A stretch of DNA of 64,000 nucleotides. It comes from Klebsormidium nitens (lineage: Eukaryota > Plantae > Klebsormidiophyceae). Position 1 is the first letter of the stretch. Each line of letters opens with the position of its first letter. The position numbers and the translations under genes were made by a program. This document shows positions 19,200 through 56,563 of this stretch, in pieces. The notes beneath the pieces are model-generated. The model saw only the letters and a list, made by a program, of their open reading frames with translations, was not told the DNA's origin and searched no databases. The DNA lies in assembly GCA_000708835.1 (NCBI GenBank), contig DF237000.1, positions 190,166 to 254,165 on the forward strand, read 5' to 3'.

Positions 19200-22100
19200 C
19201 ACGGGAGTCGCTTCTCAGCGAGGCAGCAATCCCTCCACCGGAAGAGACGGTAAGATGCACTTTGCTGGAGCCAGTGAAAGTCTACTCTAGGAGTGGAAGC
19301 TGATGGCAAATGGAGATGAATCTACATTCGTCCAACCAATTAACTAGGATTTACCCAACCGGATGAAAGATTACGAAGATTGTTAGGTGAAGTCCTGACG
19401 CCCGCATCCGACTTGTTGTGGGAGATGTGTGCATGCGGTAGCCACGCTTTGTTCTAGTTTCAAAGGAGAGCCGCTTGTTACAGCTACTTAAGAATGCTTT
19501 ATCTTGAATTGCTGTGTGAGTAGTATTGACATGCCGCATGTCTCTAGTTCTGGGCAGATTAACTGAACAGCTACAAGCCTTGCCAAACCAGTTCAAAGAG
19601 AGAGCGTGTTGCGTCGATGATCACTACACGACGCTCTTTGCCGCTTGTTCGCCACAAATTCTGGATCGTGGGTAGCGGAGCCGCTTCTTACAGGAAACCT
19701 CATGTTGTACGGAAACTAAAGGGTACTGTTTCCTTACTATTGTTCAGGCGACAGCGTCCCTGGTTGAGCTCGTGCGGCGCCCGTCAAAGAGCTTACAGAA
19801 TTTCTCAGAGCCACTTCCGTGCGGCCTAGAAAGAGATGCAAGGTCCAACCATTTTCACCTTCTGCAAAGACTTAACGGAAATTTTTTGTCTCTTTTGTTG
19901 GCGACAGCCTCCCGGCTTGAAACAATACGGTGGCCTTCAGAGAGCCTTCATGACTTCGTAGAGCCCATACTGCTGCGTTTTGCCAAGCGATGCAACTTTG
20001 AACATGTTCATCTTTTGCAAATTTCGAATGCAACTTGTTTGCCTTCTGTAGGCGACAGCGTCCCGGCCTGAGCCAGTGCGGCGCGCGCCCTTCAGAGAGC
20101 CTGCACGACTCTCTAGAGCCCATCCCGCTGCGGCTGAACACGACCCCCTACCCACGAGAGATCCGGGAGCACTTTTACCGGGAGGCGTGCCTTGCGACGA
20201 ACAACGCCGTCAACGACGGGTTGCACCAACTAGAGGTGCGTGTCGTGGGCGATCGAAGCTAGGAGCACCTCTGTTCGAGTTCTACTAGATCGCCTTTGTT
20301 TGGTACATCGGGTTCGAGGCTCACTGTTAGTTTGAGGGTGGACAACGTTCGGATTGCGGCAAGTTTTGAAAGCTGGCAGAGCGAGCATGCTAGTGTAAGC
20401 AATCTGGTAACCGGCTCTTGCGTATTCACCGAAGCAAGACTTAAACTTCAAGACGGACATGCATGACGTTTTTTGCTCATTCCTGTGACGTCATCCGACG
20501 GTGGCTTGACGTAAGATGCCGGTTTGAAGCCCCCGTCTGTCAAACCCGTATTGATTTCTCCCCATTTGTAAGAGCGTGACCTTCGCAAGCCATGCGACAG
20601 GGCTCCAAAGCGGATCGTACGACCCGGGTTCTGCAATAGATAGACGGCTGCGCTGTATGATTGGCATCACGGGAACCAACCACTAGGCTGACGTCACCTG
20701 CAGATCCGGTGCATCATCCCCGAGCTGAACCCCGAGATGGACGTGTACCGGATCGGCACCCTCCTGGAGCTCATGCGCGAGCTCGCCTTCACCTTCGCTG
20801 ACGACGGCAAGCGCGTCAAGGTGAGCCACGCTGAGTTCAGCACGTCATCTTCCTACAAAGATTTTCTAATTATTTTGTGGTCGCCGAGTGCGGATATTTT
20901 TGCCCGCCGTTCGACGACGTTGGGAGAGCTGGTTATTGGGGAGGGTAGAAAAGTCACCCCCGTACCTCTACAATCACAAGTTTTTTGAAGCTTAAGCCAC
21001 AAGCTACCGCCGGTTTTTCTTTCCATTTTCCTAGTTTCAAATGTGCGTGCAGGGGAACATGAGGATGGCATCTTATTCGGCATGCTGCTTGGAGCCTCGC
21101 ACGGGACTGAAAGCCCACGTGACTTCCACAAATTTCGCGAAGCTCATCACTGCCGCTGATTGCCGTTTCTTTTCCTTTTTCCGTTGCTTCGATTGTGCGT
21201 GTAGGGCAGCATGGAGGACGGCATGCCGCTTCAGAGAGGAACCGGAAGCCTTGGACCTGGAAAGCCTTGGAGCTGTTAATCGCCCCTGACTGCCGGTTCT
21301 GTCTTCGTTTTCTTCCTGCAGGCGTGCGTCCAGGGCAGCATGGGGGACGGCATCTTCTCCGGCATGCCCCTCGCGCTGGCCGGCACACGACGCATCATCG
21401 AGAGCATGGACTGGGGGGACGAGGAGGACAAAGCCAACTTCATCCGCTTCGGAGCAGTCGGTAAGAGCGCTCGAATATTCCTAGAAGATCACTTGCTCGA
21501 AACCGTTCCTGTGTGTATCGTGGTACTCTTTTTCAAGGAGTCTGTCTCCGCAATCGATTCCCTCGTGTTTCCCCATCTTTGATAAGCGTGTTTCCTTGGT
21601 TGAATTGGTTGATTCAGGCGTGTTGAAGAGACAGAAACGATCGGCTAGACTCCTATGCTGGGGAAGCCGTCGGTACAGGCAACCTTGTATCGGCAGTCTT
21701 TCGCCTCCAAGAGCTCTTGCTTATTCCGCAAAGTCCATGTTTGCGGTTTCGTGTGAATCACTTCGGTTTACTAGTGGCCCATCGTTGGAGGCGCCTTCTG
21801 CCGAGACGCAAGAAAGTTAGTACAACTGGGACAGCTCAGCTTCGCGAGGTACTTCTTCTGTTTCGCTTCCCCAATTCCAGAGATTGCTCGCAAACCAAGC
21901 CGTGGGCCAAGTGTGGGTTGCTTCTCTCCAGATCATGCTCAACGAAAAATGGAAGAGAACAACGAGGCAAACCTTCTCTGATGAACCTTGTGTGCAATAA
22001 AATTTTGTTCTTAGCCTCGCTGCCTCTATGTCCAGGAGCGAAGGAAGTAGCCGATGAGGACGAACTCTTTATCGTCAGGGCGCCCCAAAACGCGGTAGCG

Positions 22101-25100
22101 AATTGCATCATTCCGGTGAGTCGCCGTTCCTTTACAATCCGTTTTCAGAGCGGTGTTGCCTATATTCCGTTCGACGACGATTGGACAGTGATCTCAGGCC
22201 TTACGAAGGGAGTGCTGTCGAGATCCGTATGAAAAATGTGGGATCGTTTGCTGACGGATTCCTCGATTCCCCCGGAAAGCTAAGACAGGAGTCACCTCGT
22301 AGCGCATGGCGGGTCAAAATCAGGTCAAGAGCTCAATGACAGAAAGGTGTCTCGATCTGCAGAAATGGATATCGGGGGAACTCGTAACAATCGCACTTAA
22401 AAACTTCTCGTGGTGACCTTGCTCTGTAAACTCTGAATGAAGGTCATACTGGGAGCATATATGGCATACAAAGCGCCCCAGCGTCCCTTGAGAATGGCGC
22501 GGAGTCAGACAGTGCTTCACGAAGCCAACGGAAGCGGAATAAACGGACGGTACTGTTGCATCGGACACTTGAGGAAGTGCGTACCTGACTACAGCTTTTT
22601 GCAGGATTTGGAAGCGATGCTGGAGGCTGCGGGAACGCGGCCGCTGACAATCGTGAACCCGCGACTGAAGGTCAGTGGTTCTCTTTGCAACTCTCGGGAC
22701 TTAAAGGCAGTCGGTGCCAACTCTTTGCGAACTCGGATCATTACCCTTACGATGAGAATGTTTTTATGGACGCTCCTTGTAGGATTATGTACCCTTCCTA
22801 TCAATTTTGGGGCGCTTCGGCGAAAGTGTATGGTCATAAGACGTGCAACGAGATTACCAAGGAGTGGACGCTTCTTTCACTTTCACAAACCGTTTCACAA
22901 ACCGTTGAAATGGCCTGAGAGCACGCGTGCACGCTTTTATTTGCAGAACGTGCCTTACGGGCGTGATGCACATCCGCGGGCCCGATGAGCGCTCTTCGTA
23001 TTCATTTGGACGCTGCTAAAATCTTTCGGACGCATTCGAATACACTCGCCGCAGTTTCCTGCAGGACGTGCTTAGCTCGACGGGTATAATGTAGATTCGC
23101 GGGCGGAGGTGCGCTCCGCGTACGGATTCGGACGCTGCTTAAATCTTTCCGACGCATACATGCTCGCGCACCTCTTCCTCGTGGGACGTGCCCAGCTCGG
23201 CGGGCCGAGTGTGAATTCGTGAGCGAGAGGAGCGCTCCTCGTACTGATGCGGACGCTGCTCAGCTGTTTTGGACGCATGACTGCTCGCGCATTATGTCCT
23301 GCAGGACGTGCATAGCTCGGCGGACGTATTGCAGAATCACAGACGAGATAAGCGCTCCTCATACGGAATCGGACGCTGCCCTCAAGTTTCTGTACGGTGC
23401 TCATCTGTTTCGGACGCATGAATGCTCGCGTCTATCCCTGCAGGACGTGCCTAGTTCGGCAGGTGTGATACAGATCCGTGGCCAATACAAGCGCTCCTCA
23501 CACGGAGTCGGACGCTGCCAAATTGTTCGGACTCATAAGGGCTCAATTCTTTCGGACGCATGAATGTTCGCGCACTTTCTCTTGCAGGACGTGCCCAGCT
23601 CCGCCGGCTTGATGCAATTTGCAAGCGCGAGGAGCGCTTCTCGAAAAAACTCAAACGCTGCTGGAATCATTTGGACGTATAACGCTCGCGCACTTACGTT
23701 CCCACCTCCTGCAGGACGTCCGGCGCGCGTGATGCGGAGTCGCAGGCAAAAAGAGCGCTGCTCGTATCATTTCGGACGCTGCTCAATCCTTTTGCACAGA
23801 CACAAGATGCTCGCACGCTTCTCGTTGCAGGACGTGCCCAGCTCCGCCGGCGTGATGCAGATCCGCGGGCGCGAGGAGCGTGAGCGCTTCACTGCGTCGT
23901 TCTTCCAGTGCTACAACTTCCGGCTGCTCTACAAGGCCGCCACCAACTTCTACCCCATCATGGGCGCGCTCAGGTACGTCTGTCACTGAAAATCAGGTCT
24001 CCGGACTCTGCAACTTTAGTCCAATCCCTCCGATTGTTAGTTCTTCCACCCAGTTTCTCAGGTTGTAGCAGCTTTAGCCCTCCTGTCTGATCCTAGCACC
24101 TTGACTTGTTCTTCGGTCCTAGAAGCTTAGCCGAAAGCCTTAAGTAGTCGGAATCCGACGCTCGGACCAAGGAACAATGAAGCCGTGAAGACTGTTTCCT
24201 ATAATTCCTGGATTTCAAGAAGTCACGCGGTTTGAATTCGTTGCTCTAGCACTCTAGGTCCCCGCCCCAAACTGCCATTCGTGTATTTCAGGCCTCCTCG
24301 GGTAGACCTTTGATTGCAGAACATCTGATGAAGAACACTTGATGATACTCCAGACCACCTGAAAAGTCAAGCGTAGCCCATATGTTTAGCCCAGTCTGTT
24401 TGCCTGCGTGTTATGCCGTCGTGGCGCAGAGAAAACCGTATACGGCATATCCTAGTCCGGCGTGGCCTTTTTATTACGCTTCCTTAGCCTGCCGCCATCC
24501 CTCGAAGCTATCAAGCTCAAACTTCGCTGCTAGTCAAGTCAACAGATCCCGCTGAACAAAGCTCGCATGCTTTCACGGCCCCGCAGGTACGTCTATCCTG
24601 GCAAGTACGAGGTCTACCGGAGGAAGGATTTGGGCTTCGGTGAGGAGCGGTACGATTTGTTGGGCGAGTTCGACGAGGAGCCCATGAAGCAGGACCTGGG
24701 AGACGTGTTGTACGGGCGGCGAAAGGTCGGGGAACAGAAGCTCAAAGCCAGGTAGGGGACCGCTTCTGTTGCCAAACCTGAATCTGTTCCGTCCTAAGCT
24801 TTTCAGACTGTTGTTGAGCTGATTGAGCTCTCTCTTGTCTTCGTTGGATCTAACTTCGCAAAGACAGTGTTCGTTGATAAAGACCGCAACTGGAATGGAA
24901 CGCAAAAAAAATGCATGAATAAGTGTTGATTTTGAGATTGTCTCTGTTCAAAACACTGCGTTTTGGAAGGTACACGGATCACAAAGCGTGTGTTTGACTT
25001 CGCCAACCGGAACGAGAATTGTGGTTCTGGTTGGGAGAGCACGTTGCGAAGGGTGTGGGAATCGTGCAAGAACGACATCCTGACAGGTATTTACGTGTAC

Positions 25101-36719: not shown

Positions 36720-37697
36720 CCGTACTACCAAGGTATGATTCCGAATAAATGAATAATTATTTGCATTACGGAAAGTTAGAAAACTACCAAATAAGNNNNN
36801 NNNNNNNNNNNNNNNNNNNNNNNNNNNNNNNNNNNNNNNNNNNNNNNNNNNNNNNNNNNNNNNNNNNNNNNNNNNNNNNNNNNNNNNNNNNNNNNNNNNN
36901 NNNNNNNNNNNNNNNNNNNNNNNNNNNNNNNNNNNNNNNNNNNNNNNNNNNNNNNNNNNNNNNNNNNNNNNNNNNNNNNNNNNNNNNNNNNNNNNNNNNN
37001 NNNNNNNNNNNNNNNNNNNNNNNNNNNNNNNNNNNNNNNNNNNNNNNNNNNNNNNNNNNNNNNNNNNNNNNNNNNNNNNNNNNNNNNNNNNNNNNNNNNN
37101 NNNNNNNNNNNNNNNNNNNNNNNNNNNNNNNNNNNNNNNNNNNNNNNNNNNNNNNNNNNNNNNNNNNNNNNNNNNNNNNNNNNNNNNNNNNNNNNNNNNN
37201 NNNNNNNNNNNNNNNNNNNNNNNNNNNNNNNNNNNNNNNNNNNNNNNNNNNNNNNNNNNNNNNNNNNNNNNNNNNNNNNNNNNNNNNNNNNNNNNNNNNN
37301 NNNNNNNNNNNNNNNNNNNNNNNNNNNNNNNNNNNNNNNNNNNNNNNNNNNNNNNNNNNNNNNNNNNNNNNNNNNNNNNNNNNNNNNNNNNNNNNNNNNN
37401 NNNNNNNNNNNNNNNNNNNNNNNNNNNNNNNNNNNNNNNNNNNNNNNNNNNNNNNNNNNNNNNNNNNNNNNNNNNNNNNNNNNNNNNNNNNNNNNNNNNN
37501 NNNNNNNNNNNNNNNNNNNNNNNNNNCCAAGGTACGTACCGGAAGCCTTGAAAAGCCTAAACAAAAGGGTACCTGGGTACCTTAAAAGCTCATTCGGATT
37601 TAGGGTCGGATTCAGAAAAATAATCCAAGATTTGGGCTCGCATTCCGTAAAATAATTGCATATTTTGAGCATTCGGAATCATACCTTGGTAGTACGG
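36720..37697. mobile_element. Class II TIR element or MITE, probably Tc1/mariner superfamily (interior is an assembly gap)
   Basis: Perfect 27-bp terminal inverted repeat CCGTACTACCAAGGTATGATTCCGAAT at 36720-36746 and 37671-37697, flanked by TA on both sides (36718-36719, 37698-37699). A TA target duplication is characteristic of Tc1/mariner. AT-rich subterminal sequence. Confidence 0.8.
36796..37526. other. Assembly gap (N run)
   Basis: Continuous Ns. Confidence 1.
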
Positions 37698-43057: not shown

Positions 43058-46000
43058 TTACGGGAGTGGATCTCCGTCCAACTCAAAAGAATCTGATTTG
43101 AGACGGAGGATCTTTTGCGGACTGTCAATCTGCTTTCGCTTTTGCGGTGTCTCAACATCTGAAAGGCAGGCTCTGAGGTTCGTATTTCAATGATCTTCTC
43201 CCGGAAGAGAGGCTGCTTTGAAATGGAGCATCTTTCGCGGACTGTCAAGCTGCTTTCGCTTATCAAGCTGTCTCAACATCTGAAAGCATGTACTGAGGTT
43301 CTTAGTTCCCTGTTCTCCTTCAGGATGAGAGCTGCCCTCTCCGAGGGTGTGCTGCCGACAAACTCTCGGAGGCACCCTTCTTCAGCCTTTGGTACCTCCG
43401 AACGGGTAGCAATTGAGTTGCTTGTCCTCCGTTCCTCAAAGATCTTTGCAGTGACAATCCAATCTACTGACCAACACGGTTACAGCCCCCAATCGAGCTT
43501 CGAAGATGGGCTGCTCCGTCAAGATTTGGCTGGTTGTAGACTAACCGGGGGCAAAGATTAGCCTTTCAAAGCTCAGATTGGAACTTCAAACAAAGTATTC
43601 TCGCGGCGCAACAGTTTAAGAAGATGGTACGTCACAAGAAGACTCGCCGAAGATGCCAGGGAAAAAGGCCACGGCCGAATGCTGTTGCGCTCAGAACACT
43701 TCCTGGTAAGGTGCAACTAGTAATCACATGTTTCTCACGCTATCGTCTTTGGGCTGTCGGGCCCACATTGAGGATTAGCTTTTCAGCATACCTTGCCGCG
43801 TGCTTAGAGGCCTGAGCCCACTCAAGGCGCATGCGTGTCGTCCTTCGCTGGAGGCGTCAGAAGTCTCCAGGCTCAGCTATGTCTCCGAATAAGCAGCAGG
43901 GACGTGGCGTGGGTGCGAGCGTCGCCGCAGGAAACCACCAGCGTGCGGAGGTGGCTACCAATTATTCGCGGCATTGCTACACAACGTCTGGAAAGAGAAA
44001 CAAATCAATCATACATGATCTCATTGAATCATTATATAGAATAACAAAATTAGTAACCGAGTTCCATCTCCCGAGATCCGACCAACTGCTTTCCTCTCTG
44101 CAAAGCTCACCATGTAAAGTTACATCATGGGCAACTTTCGGAGAGAACGTAGTATGCGTCAAGCTTTTGCATGATGGACTGCAGGAGCTCTGACTGACTA
44201 TCTGAACACTGGAGCAATGCTGCAAAGAGCGTGCCAGGTGTCAGCACGGGATGACCTGCTGTTAACCAAGCCTGGTTAGACCTCGTTTAGATGCCCTTCT
44301 ACTAAGGGCCTACTAGTCATCCTGGTTAGAAGCTGGTCAGAAACCTTTCCCTGTAGCTGGGTAGGAGGAGAATCTCCATGTGCAAAGCAAAGATAAGCCT
44401 GCTGCCGGCAGACAAAGCAGCTGGCCCAAGTAACCACTCGCTTACGTCACAGCTAGGTGCAGAAACCGGCCAAGAAGCAGCCCCGCCCTTTCCATGCTTT
44501 TCCAGTTTCCAAGCACGAGGACAGTTTTGACCAGAGGGAACACAAGCAGGAGGCAAACACTTGAATTTTGCTCTCTGCCTAAATTGAAGTCAATCTGTTC
44601 CCTTTTAAATCTACAGAGCCTTTTCAAACAACTTGAGCACTTGTAGAGCCGGGGTTCTCACCAGATGGTCAGTAAAAGGAGAACAACAGCGTACGTCAAA
44701 TCTCTCGGCCACGTGTGCTCGGAGTCAGATCCTTGAGACCTGCTGCCGCCAGTAGCCCCTGAAAAGAGAAAATATAGAGCACCTCAGACTCTGTCCCTGC
44801 AAGCAGACCAATGGCCACGAGCTTGTTACCAGCGATGAGGGGAGTTCTGCCCTACTAGCAAGACGAGACTCGTGTAGCTAAACCATTAGGCTAGACTGAA
44901 GGACCAGGAGCTTCCAATGTTGTCGACAGCGCGGCTGGCGTGCGCACTCAACTTGTTGACGCGAGAAAGAAAGCTGCCCCAAACTTTAACAAAGCCCCAC
45001 GCAAGTTGAAGAACTACAGCAGACTGAAAGGACAACAATCTCAGGATAGCAGAACAGGGCCTTACACCTTCATTGACAAGCGCGGAACGCATGCTCCAAA
45101 TGCCCTGCTTGCCAGTGCCTCTCAGGAAAGCTGCCCGAAACCAAAAGAACTGGGGCGGCCACAGGAAGGGCACGCCCCGTGAACAAGACCGTAGCAGCCA
45201 GAAGGCACGCTGCCAAACCCAAGAAGCAACCTAAGTAATGGAACCCAAATCAGAGGAACAACAGTCCCAGGATAGCAGAACAGGGCCTTACATCTTCATT
45301 TGACAAGCGCGGAACGCATGCTCCGAATGCCCTGCTTGCCAGTGCTTTTCGGAAAAGTTGCCCCAAACTAACAATAGGGAATTTCCTTAGGAGGGGCATG
45401 ACCCATGAACAAAAGTACAGCAACCTCAGGGCAAGCTCTCATCCAAGAAGCAACCTAAGTACTGGATTAGACCTGAACAGACCAGAGGAACAGCATTCCC
45501 AGGATAGCAGAACAGGGCCTTACACCTTCATTGACAAGCGCGGAACGCATGCTCCAAATGCCCTGCTTGCCAGTGCCTCTCGGGAAAGCTGCAACGAACT
45601 GAAAGAACTGGGGCGGCCACAGGAAGGGCACGCCCCATGCACAAGACCGCAGCAGCCGCAATGCAAGCTGTCAAACCGAAGAAGCAACTAACCATCATAA
45701 CGAGCTAGACCTGACCAAAGTATAGGAGCGACAGTCCCAGGATCGCAGAACAGGGCCTTACATCTTCGTCGACAAGCGCGGAACGCATGCTCCGAATGCC
45801 CTGCTTGCCAGTGCCTCTCGGGAGAGCTGCCCCAAACTAGAGAAGGGGGAATCCACAGATTGTGAACTCCGAAGAACAAAACCGCAGGAATTGCAAGGGA
45901 AGGTGCCAAATTTTAAAAGCAACCAACGTAACTAGCTGGATCTGACTAAAGCAGAGGTGACATCAGTCCCAGGATAGCAGAACAGGGCCTTATATCCTCA

Positions 46001-46874
46001 TCGACAAGCGCGGAACGCATGCTCTGAACGCCCTGCTAGCCAGTGCCTTTCGGGAAAGCTTCCCCCAACCAAGAGAACAGGGGCGGCCACAGGAAAAGCA
46101 CGCCCCATGAACAAAATCAAAACAGGCGCAAGGCAAACTGTAAATCCCAATAACTGGTTAAGTCAAGTAACAAGCTGAACCCAACCAAAGCAGAGGAACA
46201 ACAGTCCCAGGATAGCAGAACAGGGCCGTACATCCTCATCGACAAGCGCGGAACGCATGCTCTGAACGCCATGCTTGCCAGTGCCTCTCGGGAAAGCTGC
46301 CCCAAACCAAGAGAACAGGGGCACTTGCAAGAAAGGAACGGAACACCAGAGCAGCCTAACAAAAGCAGTCAAGTCAAGAATGAGCAGCTATCTAAGACGA
46401 GCTGGAATTGACTAAACGGGACAAGAACCTGAGGACTCTAGTTTCTGAACTTTACATTGACTTCGTTGCGAGATGCGTCAGATGTTCTATCTGCAAATAA
46501 CTTTCTAAAAAACTTCCCCGAACAAGACGAGGCGCAAGATTGAAAGTAGCCCAAACCTGACAAACCTGGGCCAGAGTCTGAGGTGCTCACCTCTGCAATG
46601 TCGCTGGTGCAGTTCAAAAATTTGCGCACTCTTGAACCGTCGTCGACTTCTAGCTAGAAGAGTGCGCGCCCTTAACTGTCTTCCAGTGCAAAGTAACTAG
46701 CATCTCCACCGAAAACTCTGCTCAACATGGGAGGCCTTCTGTTCCAACGGCGTGCGAGAGAGAGCTTTTCCACCGCCGTTCCTCCTGATCTAGCTGACGC
46801 ACCTGGGAATGCAAAGGAGGAGCTGGGAGGGCCGCAAACTTGAACCTCGGCAGCGCCGGCACACTCCGCGACAT
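43058..46874 (-). CDS. Uncharacterised multi-exon protein (5' exons clear, 3' structure tentative)
   Basis: Exons 46874-46803 (MSRSVPALPRFKFAALPAPPLHSQ|gtgcgt), 46653-46591 (LEVDDGSRVRKFLNCTSDIAE|gtgagc), one 65-nt cassette (LSREALAS.AF.ACVPRLS..), then a phase-compatible exon near 44860-44790 (AELPLIAGNKLVAIGLL..). Later exons are not resolved. No family recognised. Confidence 0.5.
43095..43305 (-). repeat. Two ~120-bp tandem copies of a putative acceptor and exon start
   Basis: Minus strand ctttcag|ATGTTGAGACA.C...AAGCGAAAGCAG.TTGACAGTCCGC at 43279 and 43158. The upstream copy has an early TGA in the frame that stays open (DVETPQKRKQIDSPQKILRLKSDSFELDGDPLP*) in the downstream copy. Confidence 0.75.
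44990..46345 (-). repeat. Six-copy ~233-bp tandem array, each unit containing a 65-nt exon-like cassette
   Basis: Plus-strand core caggatagcagaacagggcc..gacaagcgcggaacgcatgc..gccagtgcctctc at ~45042, ~45268, ~45500, ~45738, ~45970, ~46208 (periods 226-238). The whole unit is homologous, not only the core. Confidence 0.95.
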
Positions 46875-48149
46875 CCTACTAGCAGATACTGAGATATAGT
46901 CAAAAAGTAGAGTTGTGAAGCTGCAGGTCGCCCAGGGCCAGGGCAGCCAGGGCCAAGGCGATCTGGCTGGCGCCGTGGCGGCGGGCAACCGTCCACAGCA
47001 CATGGTCTGCGCGCGCACGACTGTGGCGCCTTCAGCTACGGTGTATATACTATAATACTACAAAATTCACCTCTATTAAAAGCGAATGGCTTTCCGGTAT
47101 TGTTCCATTCACACGCCTTGTAGTTTACATTATTATATCGTGATTAGTGACGTGGACCCAACGGATGCAGCGATTGAGTTAAAAATTGACCCGTTTGAAT
47201 AAATTCCAGCACAAACCTCGAAAGTCTGGCCGCTTATGTCAAACTTGAGAAGAATTTTCACCGCCAAGAACTGGCAAACTTGCTTGAAGTTGAAGACAGC
47301 GCTTCTTCCTCCCAATTTCAACTTCCAAGTTTCAAGTTCCACGGTTCCACCTCGAGGAAGAACGCAATGTGCCCCCGGTGAGCCTGCATGAGGCCAGTGA
47401 AGGGCTTTCTTGCTCGGGTCTCTTGCTCAGGTTTTGTCCTTGTTGTCTCAAAACGTTTTCATCATGCAGACCGCCGCAGCAAGAGTGCGCTGGCTAAAAT
47501 GGCAGCTAGGGGTCTTGGACATGGCCCCCAGAAAAGCTCATGGAGGAGGTTGTGCAGCTGCAGGTAAGAGATTCTTTCTAGCAGCATTGTTTTCCTGGTG
47601 GTTCACTTGCCTTTCACGGTGGATGCCGGGTGTGTCCGCTTGTCAGTGCCAAGCAAGACAGAGCCGATTGGATGCGAGACGAGGAGTTCTTTGTCGCTCT
47701 GTAGACTAGATGTGTACTCTCTGCATACATCAGAATGCCTAGCCGAAGAAAGGAAACTCTCTGTCGCACACTGCGGTGCCACCATCTAGAGACTCAGGAG
47801 GGTACCACACCAGCATCTAGAATATCGAGAGGGTGGCGCCAGCATTCCATTGCTATTCGTTGGTATCTTTGTCGGTGAACTCGTTCATTTGATTGCCCAG
47901 AAGTTGCTTGGAAGAAAGGGAAGACGGGAATCCAATTTCAAAAGGTTGAGCCACCGCATAACGAGTCTTTTTCTTGGAAAGAAGGCAGCAAGATCCATCG
48001 CATTGCGGGGTACTTCTGTGGAGTTTCCTTATTCACTCTGCAACTTCCAACCCCTCCAGTCCATTCCCCTTACACTATGCCGGCGCCATGCCCTACAAAA
48101 GGAGTACATCGTGTGCCCCTTAGTCTTTGACGTCACTATTGACGTACAG

Positions 48150-51100
48150 GCCACCGCACTTGCCGGTGCAAACGGCCAGTGTCAACCCAGGCTGCGGCGC
48201 CTAGCGATCCCAGCATTGACGCAACAGCACAATCGACCAGCCCTCTAACCCCTCCGCCACGGCGCCCTTCAAGGCTACCGAGAGCAGAAGTTCTGACGGT
48301 CCGTGAAGCACGGCCAGAAGAGTATTGGGAGATCGCTGATACTCATTGTGGGGCGTTCTTTCCGGAAGTAAACCCGGTCCTCGGAGCGATTCTGCGATTG
48401 GACAGGTAAGGCTCGGGTGTTCCTGGGGTTTACGGAGGGTGCAGTAATGCCTGCGACGTCCAATGCGTTTCTTTTGTTCTGTCTGTCCGGTCGACCCTAC
48501 TTTTGAGGGGCATTTGCATCAAGAATGGAACGAGAAGCCTTTTGAGACTGTTCGCACCTGCTCCTGAGGGTTTGGAATCACCAAGGATAAAGGCGGACTC
48601 TCATACGTGGATTCTGAACGCTCTTGTAGTAGTGTTTGTGATGCGGGTCTTGATTGCTGCATGTAAGAGGAGGCAAACGGTATCAAAAGGCACCATGCAT
48701 CTATGTCCTAGACTGCACCCACTTTACCAAAACAGCTGCTTTGATGGATGACACAAACGCGTTCCTTCATCTTTGATGTGCTGTCGTATGAGCACCTCAG
48801 GGTTCGAGTTTCAAAGCAAGGCACCAACAAAAGAAACCAACGTTCTGCTGGCAGGCAGCCTGCCATTGGCCAGGACAGCCTTTGGCAGTAGCCGGTTCAT
48901 AAGACAACTAAGTCTTTTGAGGTTGCTTTTCAACTTTCAAAGTAATATCAGGACTTAGACAAGATTGCCCAACCCTTTTACTGGCTGCAGTGAGACTTTT
49001 TCGGTGAATTCGATTTACCAGACACAAAGTCGCCAGCTTGGTCTGTCTCCTTTAGCCACTGAACGTACACACAACACCGTAAGAAAAAAGACATGAGAAG
49101 CTGCGCTTCTCGGCACAAAGACATCGTTGGGAAGACAGGACCTGTGTGACCATACCATCAAACCCTTCGGATGATATCTGACATCCAGTGCTCTTGCTTA
49201 GGATTCGCCTTAACCATTTGATTTTGTGCCTGCAGGGTCTTCAGCCTAGCAGGGTCCACCGGCGACCCCCGAGACTGTCGGAAGATGGCGCTGGTCGCCC
49301 TCGAATCGGGACCCCAGGTGCTGCGCGACGAGTCGTTTGCGTCAGAGTCCCTCTCGGACGTAGCCCCGCTGAGACCGTTTGTCGCAGGTGCGTGCATGAA
49401 GGATGTTGAAGCTTCGACAGAAGAACAACTCGACGGGCGTCAAGTGGAGCAGGGTTAATTGGACGGACAACAATCATTTTTCCGCTTATTCCTAACGCTG
49501 TCAAGGCCGGGTTGTCCTGTCTCAACCGCTGAACAGATGCAAATTTCTGTACTTGCACACGAATTCCGCGGTTCTAACTTCTGATCACCGGTCACCGCCT
49601 CTGAGCAACTGCGGTTTCTCGCATCTGGTTTGTCTTGCGGAATGTTTTGGACAGCTTCTGTCCGTGCAAATTGGGCAAACATGGTGCTTCCTACTCAATG
49701 CAACAGCTGGTTGACTGTTCACTGACTTCAACACATCTACGGGCAACCTACAGTTACGCCACACCTCGCTTTTTGTCTGCGCATCCTTGAGTGGAATTCC
49801 TTTTCTTCACCTCGTACGTCCATTCAAGGCAGGACAAGCTTCGAACCCGCACCCATAGGCCTTAGGCAACTTGAGAAGAAGGGAACCCTACAAATCGAGC
49901 GTTCCTTCCTTAAACGCCTTCCCTTCGCTCCTGCAGTCGCTTCTGCGGGGCTCCCTTTCCCTGGCGAGCTGTTTGGGGGGAGCCAAGTGGGCGAGCGTGG
50001 AGTCATTGGCACGTGCACGCTGGACCTCACGGGGGAGTTCCTGCCCCGTCGAAGACCCCGAGGTGCGTCACAAGGGGTTGGTTTTAACTTCTTATGGTGA
50101 GGGGTTTCAGGTCAGGACTTGTGCAGTCGTACCGCGTGCGATTACAGGGATTTAAGAGGGAATTGTCTGTGATGTGTACGCTGGACCTCACCGGAGTTTT
50201 TTGCCCCCACCAAAGACCACAAGGTGCGTCGCCGAAACCTTGGGGTGTGAAGTGTTATATTCTCGCGACGTCAGGGGTTCATTCGATGCGACGTACGAAA
50301 TGCGAAGCACCCTGTCCGTTGGGGGGGTTGTCTTGCTGCGTACAAAGAACGCTTAAGTACGTCTGGTATATGTTGTAACCTTCAGGACTCTCATGAAGTG
50401 CCTGAGGTATTCTTAGGCTTTCGGTGTTCTAGATCGCTCGACTTCACGAACATAAATTTGCCAGCACAAGATAATGACGTCTTTTCCACGCGGGACCGTT
50501 TGTAAAACCAGGTTCCGCTGCCCATTGTTCATTCCGCTGAACGGCCCCCGCGCCCGCCCTTCCGCTTCCGTCCGGTGTTATTACGTTCTTTTGTTTGCAA
50601 CTTGTGCTGCTTGTTGACGATGAGAAAAGAGAGGGGAGGCTCTTTATGCAGAAAAGTACGACTCCGCTTGCTTGCTGTTCTTCTGTCACTTCCAACTTCG
50701 TGGATTAGGAAAGAAGATTGAGGTTAAGGAGACCCGATGAGTGGTGTCAAGTTAGTGAAAGCTGGTTCTTGATAATGTCAAGAAGACCGGGCGCTTTTGC
50801 TTCTGCAGCATTTGCTTTGCCTGAGTATGCCTGTAGTTCGTACCATTGAAATTCCTCTGAAAAACGGCTGCTTCAGAAACTAAGGACGGGTTCTGATCTC
50901 CCAGGTAAACGGAGGGTCGGCATCGCATACATATCCAACATGGCAGTTAGGTTGCGGCGCCGGCGTCAGGGTGTGGCGCGCTTGTTAGTCCGAAGAGCGG
51001 AGGCGATCGCCAAAAATCTTGGTTGTCGATCGATGGCACTCCACGTGGAGGAAAAGAACGTGAGCGCGCGGGCTTTGTACGAGCGCGAAGGATTTAGATT

Positions 51101-51233
51101 GATCAAAGTCCCAACCGGCGCCGTATGGCCGCAACCGACGCCGCTTGAGGGGCACACGTTAGTCATGATGATGAAGTGGCTTGGGCATCCAAGTTCAGAA
51201 CCGCCGACTTCAGAGAGCGGTTCTGCTTCGTGA
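48150..51233 (+). CDS. GNAT-family N-acetyltransferase, plastid GNAT7 (At4g28030)-like
   Basis: Exons ~48150-48405, 49236-49387, 49937-50062, 50905-51233. Peptide: ...VREARPEEYWEIADTHCGAF...VIGTCTLDLTGEFLPRRRPRGKRRVGIAYISNMAVRLRRRRQGVARLLVRRAEAIAKNLGCRSMALHVEEKNVSARALYEREGF..IKVPTGAVWPQP. Contains the acetyl-CoA motif A (RRQGVA) and N..A..LY...GF. Start codon unresolved. Confidence 0.88.
50173..50232 (+). repeat. Downstream decayed copy of the GNAT exon 3' end and donor
   Basis: tgtacgctggacctcaccggagttttttgcccccaccaaagaccacaag|gtgcgtc vs true tgcacgctggacctcacgggggagttcctgccccgtcgaagaccccgag|gtgcgtc (donor at 50063); offset 161 bp. Confidence 0.85.
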
Positions 51234-52815: not shown

Positions 52816-55800
52816 AACGCTGCAACCACCACGGGTCAACAACGAATGTTGCAGGTCGCAACGTACGTCCCGAGCGCCCACCTGACAACTGAAGAGGTCG
52901 AAGCTGCAGTCTGCGGACACCAGGTCGGACGCTTCGTACTCGTCGTCCGTGCCTTCCACGTACTCACGGTGGAGCAGCCCCTCCAAGGTGCCCATCGCCA
53001 GGCGTTCTTCCACGGCGCCTTCGCGGAACATCTGACCAACGAACTGCGAGAGACATCGTACGACCATCACAAAACGACCCCCTCCAACAAATCGACGCAT
53101 GAAGGATGGGCAACGAACATCAAATTAGTTTGACACCACAAAGGCACCAAATTTGCTTTAAACGACTGACTGACGCCCAACTGATCCGCGGCTTTTGGTC
53201 GTCGAATATGCTTCAGGTTCAATCTGGTGTTGAAATTGTGTCGGTTCGGAATCTGTTGAGCGGCTAACATTATAATTAACAATTTGGTACGGGTATGGTT
53301 GGTGCCTTTTAGGCATGCACCAATTGGTCGGGGTGGGGGAGGTTTCTGGTGTCGGATTACAGCCGACTTGAACGGGTCGTATTGAGGAAGGACCCCGTCA
53401 CAAAGTGCAGGGCACACTTTTCCGTGACGCAGTTCTAGTCGCGAAAGACGATCACTGGTCTAGCGCGGTTACAAGGCGGCGTCCTTTCTCAAGCTGTACA
53501 CCCTCTGATGCTCCCATCCATTACAGCAATTTTATCTACTAACCGTGGCTGGTTGTGGGCTGGTAAGAAAGTGGTTGATTGTCCATTAACCAGAATCAGG
53601 CGGTAACCAGCAAGGCTAAGGCCTTGTTATTCGTCCAATAACCGGAAAAACAGGTCTGGTAAAAGCCTGGTTAGCAACCAAACGTCCTGTGCTTTACTTC
53701 AGGGACTTCAGCAAGCTCGACCAGTGGATGTACAAGGCCCCGGCAAGAATACCAGTGTCAGGTCAGCACGGTTGCTTGAGAGAGTAGAGCCTCACCCCAT
53801 GGACGCTCGGGCCTTGAGTGAACGACTTGATTGCCAGGTTGAGGAACTGCACGGGGGGGTCGGTGAAGAGCTCCTCCTCAAAATCGCGGCTGATCTCCAC
53901 CTCGAGGAGGCCCTTAAGGGTGATAAGTAGACCGGCGTCTCTCTCTGAGGAAGGGACGACTTTTGCAATGCCGTCTGTGCTCGTCCAGCCCGCCTGGATA
54001 CGTGGCCAACAGGCGTGTCAGCTAAAACTTATAAGCCGTTAGCAATGATCTACATCAGTAAAGCAGCCTTTCAAAAAGCGAGATATCCGAATCAGCAAAA
54101 CATTAGGCCCCGGAACATGGATACATTGGGACCTCGTCCCGGACTAAGATTCAGAAGCGCGTGGCAAGGGCCCGTTTCGGTCGACAACTCGGCAGACAAA
54201 GCTATCTCACGCTGGGCATATGGAACGACGAGGACACCCCCTCGGGAAATCCGACAGGGGAGTTGAGAGCAGCACTTTTCTCAAAACTCTCGACAGCTTG
54301 CAGGCCAAGGGACTTCAGCGCAGCGAGCTTCGTGAAGTTTTCAGAGTGAAAAGGAAATCAGAACTCACTGCGTCCAAAGCGCCGAGCGCCTTCCCCTCGA
54401 AGTAGACTGAGAAGGGGAACTTCTCGTACGCAGTTGCACTGCGGTCCAGCCAGATTGCAAGTCGCTGCACCGCCCCTTCTGCGTTGCGGTACAAGAAGCC
54501 CATGCCGTCCATCCACGTGCCCTCATAAAAGGGCGTCACCTCGGACGTCCGCTGCTCAACGATCAGGGCGTCCGGAGGAAGACCAAACATGTGGGCATTG
54601 ACCTGAAGAAACAAGAGCTCCAGTCTGAATCATTCCACTTAGTATTGATACTGAGTGAAGCCAATGGGACAAGATAGTGTCCAGCTTGTCAGCTGACGAA
54701 CAGAATGGAGCTATCTAGAACAGCAAGCGTGTAGCTTTTCACGCAGTTGAAGTCTTGTCAAAGGCTGCTATTGACAAGCAAAGGTCCACGGAAAGCCAGC
54801 CAATAAGTCTGCTAATCCGGATACCATAGCGAGGAAAAGTTGTATGTCCGAGTGCCTCTTCACACTGAATTGAGAGCACCTCCAATCATGCACTTCAACC
54901 CCAGCAAGAGACGCTTGCTTCAGGATTGCCCAGGTCGGTAGAAAGCCTCTGCAAGCCAGTCTATAACTCACCGAGAGATGTGTGTCTGTAAACATACAGT
55001 AGGCCCTGTCGGGTAGTCCATGGAAGTCGAAGGAGAACTCGGTGTGCTCTGTTTGGTTTGGGGGCAGGAGGCCAGGCAGGTTTATATGGGGGTCCTTTTC
55101 AATGGTAGCTGCACAGAGAAGAGACGCGCGATCCCATTTGACTTACTTTTCCTGGAGCAAGACGGAAAAGCTAGCTTTAACATTCAAGCTCCTTATTGTT
55201 GCATTGCTTGACCACAACGAAAGATTGCACTAATGAAAGGCGATATCTCGATATCCAGCAAGACAAGAGAGGGCACAAGCAAGGCTCTTGATCCAATGTG
55301 CTTCAAGGAAAGCAACAAGTCACATCATATGCATATCAGAGCTGCAGGTCACCAGCATTTTTAAACGAGTGGCCCAAAAAGTTGTCTTCCTAGGAGCTCA
55401 CCTGCGACACATGTACCTTCAGTGCAGGTTTCAGTACTACCACAGCATTTGGCCCCGCAAATTTTGGAGGTTGCACAGCACCCCCCGCTGCCGTCGCAGA
55501 CGCCACTGGCACAGCAGTTCCTCCCACAAACATTTGCACTTGGACAGCACGCGGCCCCGTTGCTGTCACAGACGCCGCTTGAGACGCCAGTGTCGCAGCA
55601 ATTGGTCCCACAAGTAAGTGCACTTGGACAGCACGAAGCCCCGTAGCTGGTGCAAAGGCCGTTGGCACAGCAGTAGCTCCCACAGATGTTTGCACTTGCA
55701 CAACACCCGGGCCCGTTGCTGTTACAGACGGGGGAGGTGCCTGGCGCACGGGAGGGGGAGGGGCAGCAAGTCGTGCCGCCACAGCTCGACCCTGATGCGC

Positions 55801-56563
55801 AGCAGAGACTGGCGATGGGACTTGCACAACTCGTCCCTGCCGCGCAGCACGCAGTCCCACACAGTTGGCTGGTGGGGCAACAAGCCGACGGCAAGGTCTT
55901 CGAGTCGCAGATACCTGGGAAGTTGCAGCATGAGCTGCCGCACAAAGTTTGCCCTGGATCATTGCAACAGACTTTTGTGGTTGCTCCAAAGAGGGTACCG
56001 GTCATGCAGGACTGCCCGAGCGAGCAGCACGTCGCGCTGCTGCCAGTGCCACAGACCCGGGCGTTGGGGCAGCATGTAGCGCTGCTGCCGGTGCCGACGC
56101 ACGTGTTGCCCGCCGGACAGCATGTGGGTCCGCAGCACGTGTCTGCCGACGAGGAACAGCACGACCCTCCGCAGCACTTTCCAGACGTACAGCACGCTGC
56201 GCCTGCGTACACGCTCGTGCTGGTCATGATGCTGCAGCACACGCTTGCCGGAGTCGCATATTGTTGCGCTCCGGTGGGGCAACAGATCGGCAGGCTTGAG
56301 TAAGACATGGATTGGCAGGAGACCATGGTGGAACCAAAAGTCGAATACTGCGGGCAGCAGGTATAGGTAGAGAAGCCAGCACTGGGGTCGCTGGTAGAGC
56401 AAACAGTGCCCGACGAGCAGCATGTGTTGCCCCCGCAACATGTGGTGCCCGGTGCACACTGCTGTGCGGTACCGCACGGAAGGGATTGCCCGCGTGCGCC
56501 AGGGGCGCGGGCGCCGATGCCCAAGAGGATGAAAAGAACGATTGTGGGGGGCAAGGAAGTCAT
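52730..56563 (-). CDS. Secreted cysteine-rich (CC-repeat) protein with C-terminal Root_cap/VWD-like domain
   Basis: Phase-consistent exons 56563-55402, 55108-54972, 54602-54369, 53993-53796, 53043-52882, 52801-52730 (last exon tentative). Hydrophobic signal peptide MTSLPPTIVLFILLGIGARA, then ~360 aa of C-x(n)-CC repeats, then TIEKDPHI..FDFHGLPDRAYCMFTDTHLSVNAHMFG..TWMDGMGFLY..SVHGFVGQMFR..YVEGTDDEYEASDLVSADCSFDLF. This parallels the DP(H/R)F..FYFHG..VNA.F.G..TW / GVLGQTY motifs of plant root-cap/LEA-related proteins. Confidence 0.85.

What the first reader, a model, noticed from the sequence alone, without database searches (positions are those of the whole stretch)
44990..46345. Candidate mutually exclusive exon cluster: six tandem 233-bp units, each holding a complete 65-nt exon
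Seen: on the minus strand each unit reads cag|CTTTCCCGAGAGGCACTGGCAAGC..GCATGCGTTCCGCGCTTGTC..GAT|gta. Three copies keep AG, GT and an open phase-0 frame: 46296-46232 LSREALASMAFRACVPRLSMR, 45826-45762 LSREALASRAFGACVPRLSTK and 45588-45524 LSREALASRAFGACVPRLSMK. The other three are broken, one each by a lost donor (~45990), a lost acceptor plus a 1-nt insertion (~45290), and an in-frame TGA (~45060). Several differences are synonymous in this frame (CTT/CTC, GCA/GCT, GCA/GCG, TTT/TTC, TCA/TCG). The upstream exon ends in phase 0 and the next exon starts in phase 2, which fits exactly one 65-nt cassette; including two would frameshift. Inference: a small Dscam-style mutually exclusive cassette, or a birth-and-death series of exon copies, in an uncharacterised algal gene.
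Basis: partly seen in the sequence, partly recalled or inferred. Interest (0 to 1): 0.8.

Follow-up and report, generated by a model that had tools for sequence, protein, structure and literature searches.

The report
Conserved tandem exon-copy array in intron
A green alga carries six well-kept and two decayed head-to-tail copies of a 65-base exon-like piece with its splice signals, closed off by a 21-base RNA clasp; the copies are preserved as nucleotide sequence, not as protein code, so they look like spare or decoy exons, not a Dscam-like protein-diversity switch.

Summary
The array is real. There are six units of 227-238 nt on the minus strand (46400-44994), plus one decayed unit at each end.

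New here:
- Conservation covers a ~120-nt core that runs about 40 nt past the proposed donor (85-98% identity). The rest of each unit is 36-64% identical.
- A related alga (Logan contig L001) has the same core at the same place at 94% identity. Third codon positions of the neighbouring GNAT gene differ by 31%.
- Variable sites show no codon-position bias (4:5:6).
- No docking or selector pairing was found.
- A 21-nt stem (20/21, -39.5 kcal/mol) brackets the array, from 2 nt after the upstream donor to 16 nt before a distal acceptor. Its 5' arm is 100% conserved in L001.
- Two 1-nt indels in L001 cancel out across the upstream-exon/first-copy junction, which hints that this junction is spliced and read.

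Verdict: a whole-exon tandem array inside one intron-like interval, constrained at nucleotide level. The first copy is probably a real optional exon. The others are decoy or poison-like copies, or relics. Protein-diversifying mutually exclusive splicing is not supported. No RNA data were obtainable. The scan has already noted similar junction-copy arrays elsewhere in this genome.

The parts
46982..47022 (-). 41-nt block conserved in the related alga (95%), about 25-30 nt downstream of a TATA-like run. Possible 5' end or promoter element of the minus-strand transcript.
46591..46653 (-). Putative upstream exon (E2). Only its last ~30 nt are conserved, with 5 substitutions and a 1-nt deletion in L001. 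It ends at a GT donor (46590-46589).
46568..46588 (-). 5' arm of the bracketing stem, starting at intron position +3. Identical in L001 together with the donor (23 nt).
46390..46567 (-). U0, a decayed copy of the unit. L001 also has a decayed copy here.
46163..46400 (-). Unit U1. Exon-like 65 nt at 46296-46232, CAG acceptor, GTACGG donor, frame open. It matches the L001 copy best (94%).
45931..46162 (-). Unit U2. Exon-like 46058-45994, donor lost (AT at 45993-45992). The core groups with U1/L001, while the upstream spacer groups with U4/U6 (mosaic).
45693..45930 (-). Unit U3. Exon-like 45826-45762, AG and GT kept, frame open.
45462..45692 (-). Unit U4. Exon-like 45588-45524, AG and GT kept, frame open. 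98% identical to U6 in the 65 nt.
45235..45461 (-). Unit U5. Exon-like 45357-45292 (66 nt, 1-nt insertion), acceptor lost (CAA).
44994..45234 (-). Unit U6.
44888..44985 (-). U7, a decayed last copy. It keeps the acceptor-side 16 nt exactly and the rest is diverged.
44777..44797 (-). 3' arm of the bracketing stem (20 of 21 complementary to the 5' arm). It lies 16 nt upstream of a pyrimidine-run AG at 44760-44759.
44662..44758 (-). Putative downstream exon (E3), 97 nt, bounded by AG and a GTGAGA donor. Open in one frame only.
   Evidence: direct reading

Best explanation
This is a whole-exon tandem array. A 65-nt exon, its two splice sites and about 170 nt of intron were duplicated repeatedly. 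The result is eight head-to-tail copies: six well kept and one decayed at each end. They fill a single 1.83-kb intron-like interval (46590 to 44759, minus strand) of an unannotated, fast-evolving transcription unit that runs divergently from a GNAT acetyltransferase gene. A ~120-nt core of each unit is held by selection on the nucleotide sequence (RNA or DNA level), not on an encoded peptide. The core comprises the acceptor, the 65 nt, the donor and about 40 nt of downstream intron. The first copy (U1) is most likely the authentic, optionally included cassette. The other copies are exon look-alikes that at most act as splicing decoys or frame-shifting poison exons. A 21-bp stem pairs the first bases of the interval with the bases just before the distal acceptor. 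In the pre-mRNA it would loop the whole array out, so that the upstream exon can be joined directly to the downstream one. Shown: the array, its conservation profile, orthologous conservation, the lack of codon-level selection, the lack of docking/selector pairing, and the stem with conservation of its 5' arm. Inferred: transcription on the minus strand, use of the splice sites, the looping-out role, and any decoy or poison function.
For: Array and units. Conservation profile: spacer 0.53-0.62 mean pairwise identity, core 0.83-0.97, peak just after the donor. By region: exon-like part 85-98%, 42 nt downstream 78-98%, upstream spacer 36-64% except among U2/U4/U6. Ortholog: the Logan contig L001 is syntenic through five GNAT exons and starts inside a repeat unit. 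Its core is 94% identical to U1, whereas introns are unalignable and GNAT exons are 83-91% identical. GNAT third codon positions differ by 31% (7:6:30 by codon position). So 5 substitutions plus 1 indel in 104 nt means strong constraint. L001 has the same order: arm, decayed U0, good unit. The array therefore predates the species split, and the decay of U0 beside the conserved U1 argues for selection over a low mutation rate. U1/U2 cores are closer to L001 than to U3-U6, so there has been no array-wide homogenisation since the split. Compensating 1-nt indels in L001 lie 3 nt before the donor of E2 and 7-10 nt into the first copy. Stem: 21 nt, 20/21 complementary; the 17-nt arm core has no other match in the window with 3 mismatches allowed; -39.5 kcal/mol; 0 of 200 shuffles reach 21 nt; 5' arm plus donor identical in L001. 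Strand: canonical CAG|...|GTAAGG on the minus strand, like the GNAT introns, and T>A skew on the minus strand. This genome is rich in junction-copy arrays.
Against: No transcript evidence of any kind could be obtained. No start codon or conserved reading frame defines the host gene, and no Pfam domain lies within 9 kb on either strand. The unit may therefore be non-coding, in which case 'exon' is only a resemblance. The stem covers intron positions +3 to +23 and probably the branch-point region, so it could inhibit the E2-E3 splice instead of helping it. The 3' arm could not be checked in the relative because L001 ends in the array. The conservation of U2-U6 could come from core-restricted gene conversion with U1 and not from selection on each copy; U2 is a mosaic and one variant is shared discordantly (and alignment). 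Local RNA folding of the core is not better than shuffles (z from -1.9 to +1.7).
Confidence: 0.4

Rival explanations
1. One reading: a functional mutually exclusive exon cluster. Exactly one of the intact 65-nt copies (U1, U3, U4) enters each mRNA and yields slightly different protein isoforms. The bracketing stem tunes the choice, as the R2-R5 structure does in ATE1.
For: Three copies keep AG, GT and an open frame. The 65-nt length makes double inclusion frame-shifting, and the second copy would hit TGA (direct reading). The cores of several copies look constrained. Flanking intron conservation and reduced synonymous change are typical of regulated alternative exons. Compensating indels support translation across E2-U1. 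A bracketing long-range stem is known from an MXE gene (PMC7797038). Other agents of this scan report RNA-supported exclusive exon pairs in this genome (not checked by me).
Against: No codon-position bias among 15 variable sites (4:5:6). Three of six copies are disabled. The peptides differ by only 1-3 residues, so there is little diversity to select for. No docking/selector pairing: the best helices are 9-14 bp with 2-6 G.U. The frame cannot be continued into the clear downstream exon with one cassette. No protein holding the peptide was found among 1.84 billion representatives.
Confidence: 0.12
2. An inert relic array, i.e. a whole-exon version of the 'mirage' minisatellites. Only one copy (U1), or none, is functional. 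The others are unused by-products of local duplication. Their similarity reflects recent duplication and gene conversion from the selected copy.
For: Junction-spanning tandem arrays are common in this genome and were mostly judged dead relics by earlier follow-ups. End copies are decayed, as in amphioxus mirages where cluster edges escape homogenisation (PMC3087553). U4/U6 are recent twins (98%). U2 is a mosaic, which shows recombination or conversion. Three copies carry disabling changes.
Against: The core/spacer contrast holds for old pairs (for example U1-U3: 91% against 36%). U1/U2 are closer to the other species' copy than to U3-U6, so conversion has not homogenised the array since the split. 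U2 has about 7 private changes in 125 nt, where about 27 would be expected if it had been neutral since the split (my count, with the rate).
Confidence: 0.2
3. Not an exon at all. The cores are repeated cis-regulatory DNA modules (binding-site clusters), or modules of a long non-coding RNA, lying upstream of and divergent from the GNAT gene. The AG/GT resemblance is a leftover of origin or a coincidence.
For: Constraint acts on all three codon positions and runs across the 'splice sites'. The array lies 1.1-2.4 kb upstream of the GNAT start, together with two other short conserved non-coding blocks. No coding gene is recognisable around it. The invariant 20-mer holds CATGC and CGCG motifs of the kind bound by plant B3 and CAMTA factors (from memory, not tested).
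Against: The conserved block at 46620-46568 looks like an exon end plus a canonical GTGAGC donor. The compensating indels across the E2/U1 junction are unexpected for DNA elements (rough post-hoc estimate p about 0.003-0.01). The strand skew fits minus-strand transcription. Rfam has no match.
Confidence: 0.18
4. A non-autonomous DNA transposon or introner-like element. The 21-nt arms are its terminal inverted repeats and the array is its internal tandem repeat.
For: A nearly perfect inverted repeat brackets the whole array. Many such elements carry internal tandem repeats (general knowledge).
Against: No target-site duplication next to the arms (direct reading). No other copy of the arm in 64 kb. 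The 5' arm is identical in a species whose neutral DNA is unalignable, which argues for selection and against a decaying insertion.
Confidence: 0.04

Closest known systems
[quoted passage not shown]
   Same: Head-to-tail units of 150-240 nt that copy exon sequence with its splice signal into the intron. Many units keep AG/GT. Edge units are more diverged than inner ones. Arrays of this kind are frequent in this algal genome according to earlier notes of this scan.
   Different: Here the unit holds a complete small exon with both splice sites, not one boundary. The ~120-nt core is conserved far above the spacer and above neutral divergence in a second species. The array is closed by a conserved stem.
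Mutually exclusive exon clusters controlled by competing RNA structures (Dscam, 14-3-3 zeta, srp; model of Ivanov and Pervouchine, PMC6071210)
   Same: Tandem homologous exons of equal length that arose by duplication of an exon plus adjacent intron. The length is not a multiple of three, so two in a row shift the frame. A conserved intronic element lies next to each exon.
   Different: No docking site complementary to the repeated intronic element was found. There is no protein-level selection or useful diversity among copies. Half of the copies are disabled. There is no transcript evidence.
Ultra-long-range bracketing RNA structure R2-R5 of human ATE1, and exon looping-out stems in general (PMC7797038)
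   Same: Complementary intronic segments on either side of a duplicated-exon cluster that could bring distant splice sites together.
   Different: The span is 1.8 kb, not 30 kb. The arms sit almost on the 5' splice site and on the likely branch-point region. There is no experimental or covariation support here.
Ultraconserved poison or decoy cassette exons of splicing-factor genes (from general knowledge; not looked up here)
   Same: Nucleotide-level conservation that covers synonymous positions and flanking intron. The length shifts the frame.
   Different: The host gene is unknown and shows no RNA-binding domain. Six tandem copies are not a known feature of poison exons.

Membership tests
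Mutually exclusive exon cluster (Dscam/ATE1 type) | Tandem homologous exons of equal length, each with its own acceptor and donor | tested here: inconclusive
   Six 65/66-nt homologous segments. Only U1, U3, U4 and U6 keep both AG and GT; U2 lacks GT and U5 lacks AG.
Mutually exclusive exon cluster (Dscam/ATE1 type) | Each variant is kept as working code (purifying selection on the peptide, open frame through the flanking exons) | tested here: not met
Variable sites fall 4:5:6 by codon position. There is a stop in U6 and a frameshift in U5. With one cassette, the frame stops within 10-20 codons of the clear downstream exon.
Mutually exclusive exon cluster (Dscam/ATE1 type) | A docking site complementary to a selector next to every variant (competing structures) | tested here: not met
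   The best ungapped helices between the core consensus and both flanks are 9-14 bp with 2-6 G.U pairs. Duplex energies are only about 2-2.7 sd below those of 40 mononucleotide shuffles.
Mutually exclusive exon cluster (Dscam/ATE1 type) | Mature RNAs carry exactly one variant | not testable with these tools
   No RNA data. The window's own proteins and ORFs are not in the collections.
Mirage / junction-spanning intronic minisatellite | Head-to-tail repeats whose unit contains exon sequence plus its splice signal | tested here: met
Mirage / junction-spanning intronic minisatellite | The array abuts the authentic exon whose border was copied | tested here: inconclusive
   The authentic exon is not known. 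U1 is the best candidate, from orthologous conservation and the compensating indels.
Mirage / junction-spanning intronic minisatellite | Copies decay as unused sequence | tested here: not met
   Cores are 85-98% identical while spacers are 36-64%. Only the two end copies are decayed.
Looping-out / bracketing long-range RNA stem | Complementary segments in the introns on both sides of the cluster, beyond chance | tested here: met
   21 nt, 20/21 complementary, -39.5 kcal/mol, 0 of 200 shuffles reach this length.
Looping-out / bracketing long-range RNA stem | Both arms conserved, or co-varying, across species | tested here: inconclusive
   The 5' arm is identical in L001. The 3' arm is not available because the contig ends in the array.
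TIR DNA transposon / introner | Terminal inverted repeats with a target-site duplication and other copies in the genome | tested here: not met
   No duplication of the flanking bases. No other arm copy in the window. The rest of the genome is not searchable here.
Known structured RNA families (Rfam 15) | A match to a covariance model | tested here: not met
   No hit at gathering score in the window. The only hit at E up to 10 in 44600-47100 is an irrelevant one at E=2 outside the array.

The most novel reading that the evidence does not exclude
Several of the copies are truly functional. The cluster would be a three-or-more-way alternative-exon cluster, or an array of selected poison/decoy exons. 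Its use would be gated by a conserved stem that pairs the 5' splice-site region with the distal branch-point region. That would be an RNA-structure-controlled multi-exon splicing switch in a streptophyte alga, a group where only exclusive exon pairs are known to me.
Probability: 0.12. Interest if true: 0.8.

Novelty: new variant of a known kind. Interest (0 to 1): 0.45.

Why it matters
Tandem copies of exon borders are common in this alga and are usually dead weight. This array differs in three ways: the copied piece is a whole exon, its core is conserved more strongly than the neighbouring coding exons in a second species, and a conserved stem closes the array off. If RNA data show that several copies engage the spliceosome, this would be a natural example of how exon duplication plus a pre-existing stem gives rise to regulated alternative splicing, whether decoys, poison exons or exclusive exons, outside animals. 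If only one copy is used, it still shows how a cell may tolerate a row of near-perfect false exons.

Tried and rejected
- Metagenome scan for the invariant 19-mer: 11 loci, all chance matches of 19-24 nt in GC-rich, unrelated contigs.
- phmmer of the 57-aa ORF that holds the U3 cassette against 1.84 billion representatives: 4 weak hits, all on the non-cassette part.
- The search for homologous proteins: the GNAT exon gave the one useful relative. A Cys-rich ORF and an array ORF gave nothing.
- Exact look-ups of window ORFs: not on record. So neither the genome's own annotation nor any RNA-derived contig could be reached.
- Rfam at gathering and at E up to 10: nothing. No tRNA.
- Folding of single cores on both strands: not better than shuffles. 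The RNAalifold consensus hairpin (-40.6 kcal/mol) pairs the acceptor side with the conserved downstream intron, but has one covarying pair and several breaks. I do not rely on it.
- Codon-usage log-odds trained on three window ORFs: the GNAT control exons did not score, so the method was dropped.
- Pfam on the 20 longest open segments of both strands between 37.6 and 48.2 kb: nothing.
- A pairwise aligner with cheap gaps gave 73% identity even for shuffled spacers, so those numbers were discarded.
- An alternative coding frame ('frame B') reads slightly better across E2 in both species, but shows no better synonymous bias (4 of 15). It is kept only as a note.
- The joined spliced model (E2 + cassette + E3) was not built or searched as one sequence. 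Exons were read and searched apart, by reference.
Full report
THE OBSERVATION. On the minus strand, between 46400 and 44994, there are six head-to-tail units of 238, 232, 238, 231, 227 and about 241 nt. TRF reports the array with period 238 (5.5 copies, 76% matches) and period 470 (2.8 copies, 80%). The second period arises because the spacers before U2, U4 and U6 resemble each other. A 20-nt string is identical in all six units and occurs nowhere else in the 64 kb, even with three mismatches allowed. That TGA is at 45124-45122, not near 45060.

Two more copies had been missed. One is a decayed copy between the array and the upstream donor (46567-46390; local alignment about 3.5 sd above shuffles). 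The other is a decayed copy after U6 (44985-44888; about 5 sd), which still keeps 16 nt of the acceptor side exactly. Together the eight copies fill nearly the whole interval described below.

WHERE THE CONSERVATION LIES. Mean pairwise identity among the six units is 0.53-0.62 over the first ~100 columns and 0.83-0.97 over a core of about 120 nt, then drops again. The core starts about 12 nt before the proposed acceptor. It contains the 65 nt and continues about 40 nt beyond the proposed donor. The best-kept 20 columns (0.97) lie in that 'intron' part. By region, the 65 nt are 85-98% identical and the 42 nt after the donor 78-98%. The upstream spacer is 36-64% identical, except 76-88% among U2, U4 and U6. 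So the conserved object is not the exon as such.

CODING TEST. I counted 15 variable sites in the 65 nt across the six copies and the ortholog (alignments). That is 6 synonymous changes and 9 non-synonymous changes including a stop, a non-significant excess (binomial p about 0.15 against 25% expected). In the second open frame only 4 of the 15 are synonymous. The third frame has a TGA in every copy. With 7-10% change per copy, about half of the copies should lose AG, GT or the frame by chance, and three of six have. A phmmer search of an ORF holding the U3 cassette against 1.84 billion representative proteins matched nothing on the cassette part.

A RELATED SPECIES. A search with the last exon of the neighbouring plus-strand GNAT acetyltransferase gene found one ORF (89% identity) on a 5768-bp Logan contig, L001.

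- L001 is genomic and syntenic. Five GNAT exons align at 79-91% with the same spacing, and the introns do not align.
- In the last GNAT exon, the 43 differences fall 7:6:30 on the three codon positions, so third positions differ by 31%.
- Outside GNAT only three blocks align: a 41-nt block at 47022-46982 (95%), the end of the proposed upstream exon with its donor and the next 21 nt (46620-46568), and the repeat core.
- L001 begins inside a repeat unit. Its first 104 nt are 94% identical to U1, with 5 substitutions and one 1-nt insertion. This is more conserved than the coding exons next door.
- L001 has the same order as the window: arm, decayed copy, good copy. So at least two copies existed before the species split. 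One has decayed in both species and the other has been held in both. That argues for selection and against a locally low mutation rate.
- That the contig breaks at the best-conserved stretch suggests the relative also has several copies (inference).
- U1 and U2 are closer to the L001 copy (94-95% in the 65 nt) than to U3-U6 (86-91%). The array has therefore not been homogenised as a whole since the split.
- U2 pairs with U1/L001 by its core but with U4/U6 by its spacer, so recombination or gene conversion has occurred.

A HINT OF SPLICING AND TRANSLATION. Relative to the window, L001 lacks one base 3 nt before the upstream donor (GCAGAG|GT against GCAAG|GT). It also has one extra base 7-10 nt into the first copy (CCC against CCCC). 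In a spliced RNA these two changes lie about 10 nt apart and cancel. As a rough post-hoc estimate, such a pair would arise by chance in a few cases per thousand. This is the only evidence that the upstream exon is joined to the first copy and read as code, and it does not say in which frame. Neither has a start codon in the upstream exon. The region further upstream is not conserved as code.

THE BRACKETING STEM. The 21 nt at 46588-46568 start two bases after the upstream donor. They are complementary (20 of 21) to 44797-44777, which end 16 nt before a pyrimidine run and an AG at 44760-44759.

- The 17-nt perfect part occurs only at these two places in the window with up to three mismatches allowed.
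- The duplex energy is -39.5 kcal/mol, and none of 200 dinucleotide shuffles of the 4-kb region gives an inverted repeat this long.
- The donor and the 5' arm are identical in L001 over 23 nt.
- The stem encloses all eight copies.
- After the distal AG comes a 97-nt exon-like piece (44758-44662) that ends at a GTGAGA donor. It is open only for phase-1 entry. With a phase-0 or phase-2 entry it stops after about 20 or 10 codons (reading).
- In one of the two open frames, a direct join of the upstream exon to this piece stays open, while adding one copy leads to a stop. I regard all such frame arguments as unsafe without RNA data.

TESTS FOR A DSCAM-LIKE MECHANISM. The repeated intronic element after each copy could be a selector, so I looked for a docking site. 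The best ungapped helices between the core consensus and 700 nt on either side are 9-14 bp with 2-6 G.U pairs. Duplex energies are only about 2-2.7 sd below those of 40 mononucleotide shuffles. The consensus fold instead pairs the element with the acceptor side of its own unit, and that fold has almost no covariation. Single units do not fold better than shuffles.

THE SETTING. No Pfam domain is found in the longest open segments of either strand from 37.6 to 48.2 kb. Rfam and tRNA scans are empty. The minus strand is T-rich over A here, as the plus strand is over the GNAT gene. The splice-like motifs resemble the GNAT splice sites. Earlier notes of this scan name the organism as Klebsormidium nitens. 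They describe many intronic arrays of copied exon borders, compared with the 'mirages' of amphioxus, and several RNA-supported exclusive exon pairs on other DNA of this genome. I did not check those claims, apart from reading the mirage description (PMC3087553).

INTERPRETATION. The data fit a whole-exon version of the local duplication process that is common in this genome, acting on a small optional exon that already sat inside a stem-closed interval. The first copy is selected and probably used. The other copies are either kept by nucleotide-level constraint (as decoys or frame-shifting poison exons, for which a stop codon is no defect) or kept similar by conversion from the first. The stem most plausibly loops the array out, as in known looping-out and bracketing structures (PMC7797038; PMC6071210). 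Because it overlaps the 5' splice-site region and the likely branch-point region, it could equally act as a brake. A protein-diversifying exclusive cluster is the least supported of the splicing models. A purely DNA-level or non-coding-RNA role cannot be excluded.

LIMITS. No RNA evidence and only one partial ortholog were obtainable. The joined spliced model was not built or searched, as required by the operators. Exons were handled apart, by reference.

Noticed in passing
window 47447-51233 (+): A five-exon GNAT-type acetyltransferase gene (Pfam Acetyltransf_1/7 on the ortholog's last exon), transcribed divergently from the array. It is conserved exon by exon in the Logan contig L001.
   Followed up: partly
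window 46982-47022: A 41-nt block that is 95% identical in the related alga. It sits between the two divergent units, about 25-30 nt downstream of a TATA-like run on the minus strand, and contains an ATG that is not followed by conserved code.
   Followed up: partly
window 43093-43335 and 22987-23519: Two further tandem repeats with periods of 120-139 nt (2-3.3 copies, 72-80% matches). They may be junction-copy arrays of the kind noted elsewhere in this genome.
   Followed up: no
window 55361-56563 (-): A 400-aa cysteine-rich open frame with a signal-peptide-like start and many CC/CxxC repeats. No database protein scored E <= 1e-30.
   Followed up: partly
window 3506-4444 and 20692-21480: The same open-frame peptides recur about 17 kb apart, which suggests a dispersed repeat or segmental duplication in the gene-poor first 36 kb.
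   Followed up: no
window 36796-37526: An assembly gap of 731 N.
   Followed up: no
L001 1-104: The related alga's contig ends exactly in the best-conserved part of the repeat core, as expected if that species also has several near-identical copies.
   Followed up: partly
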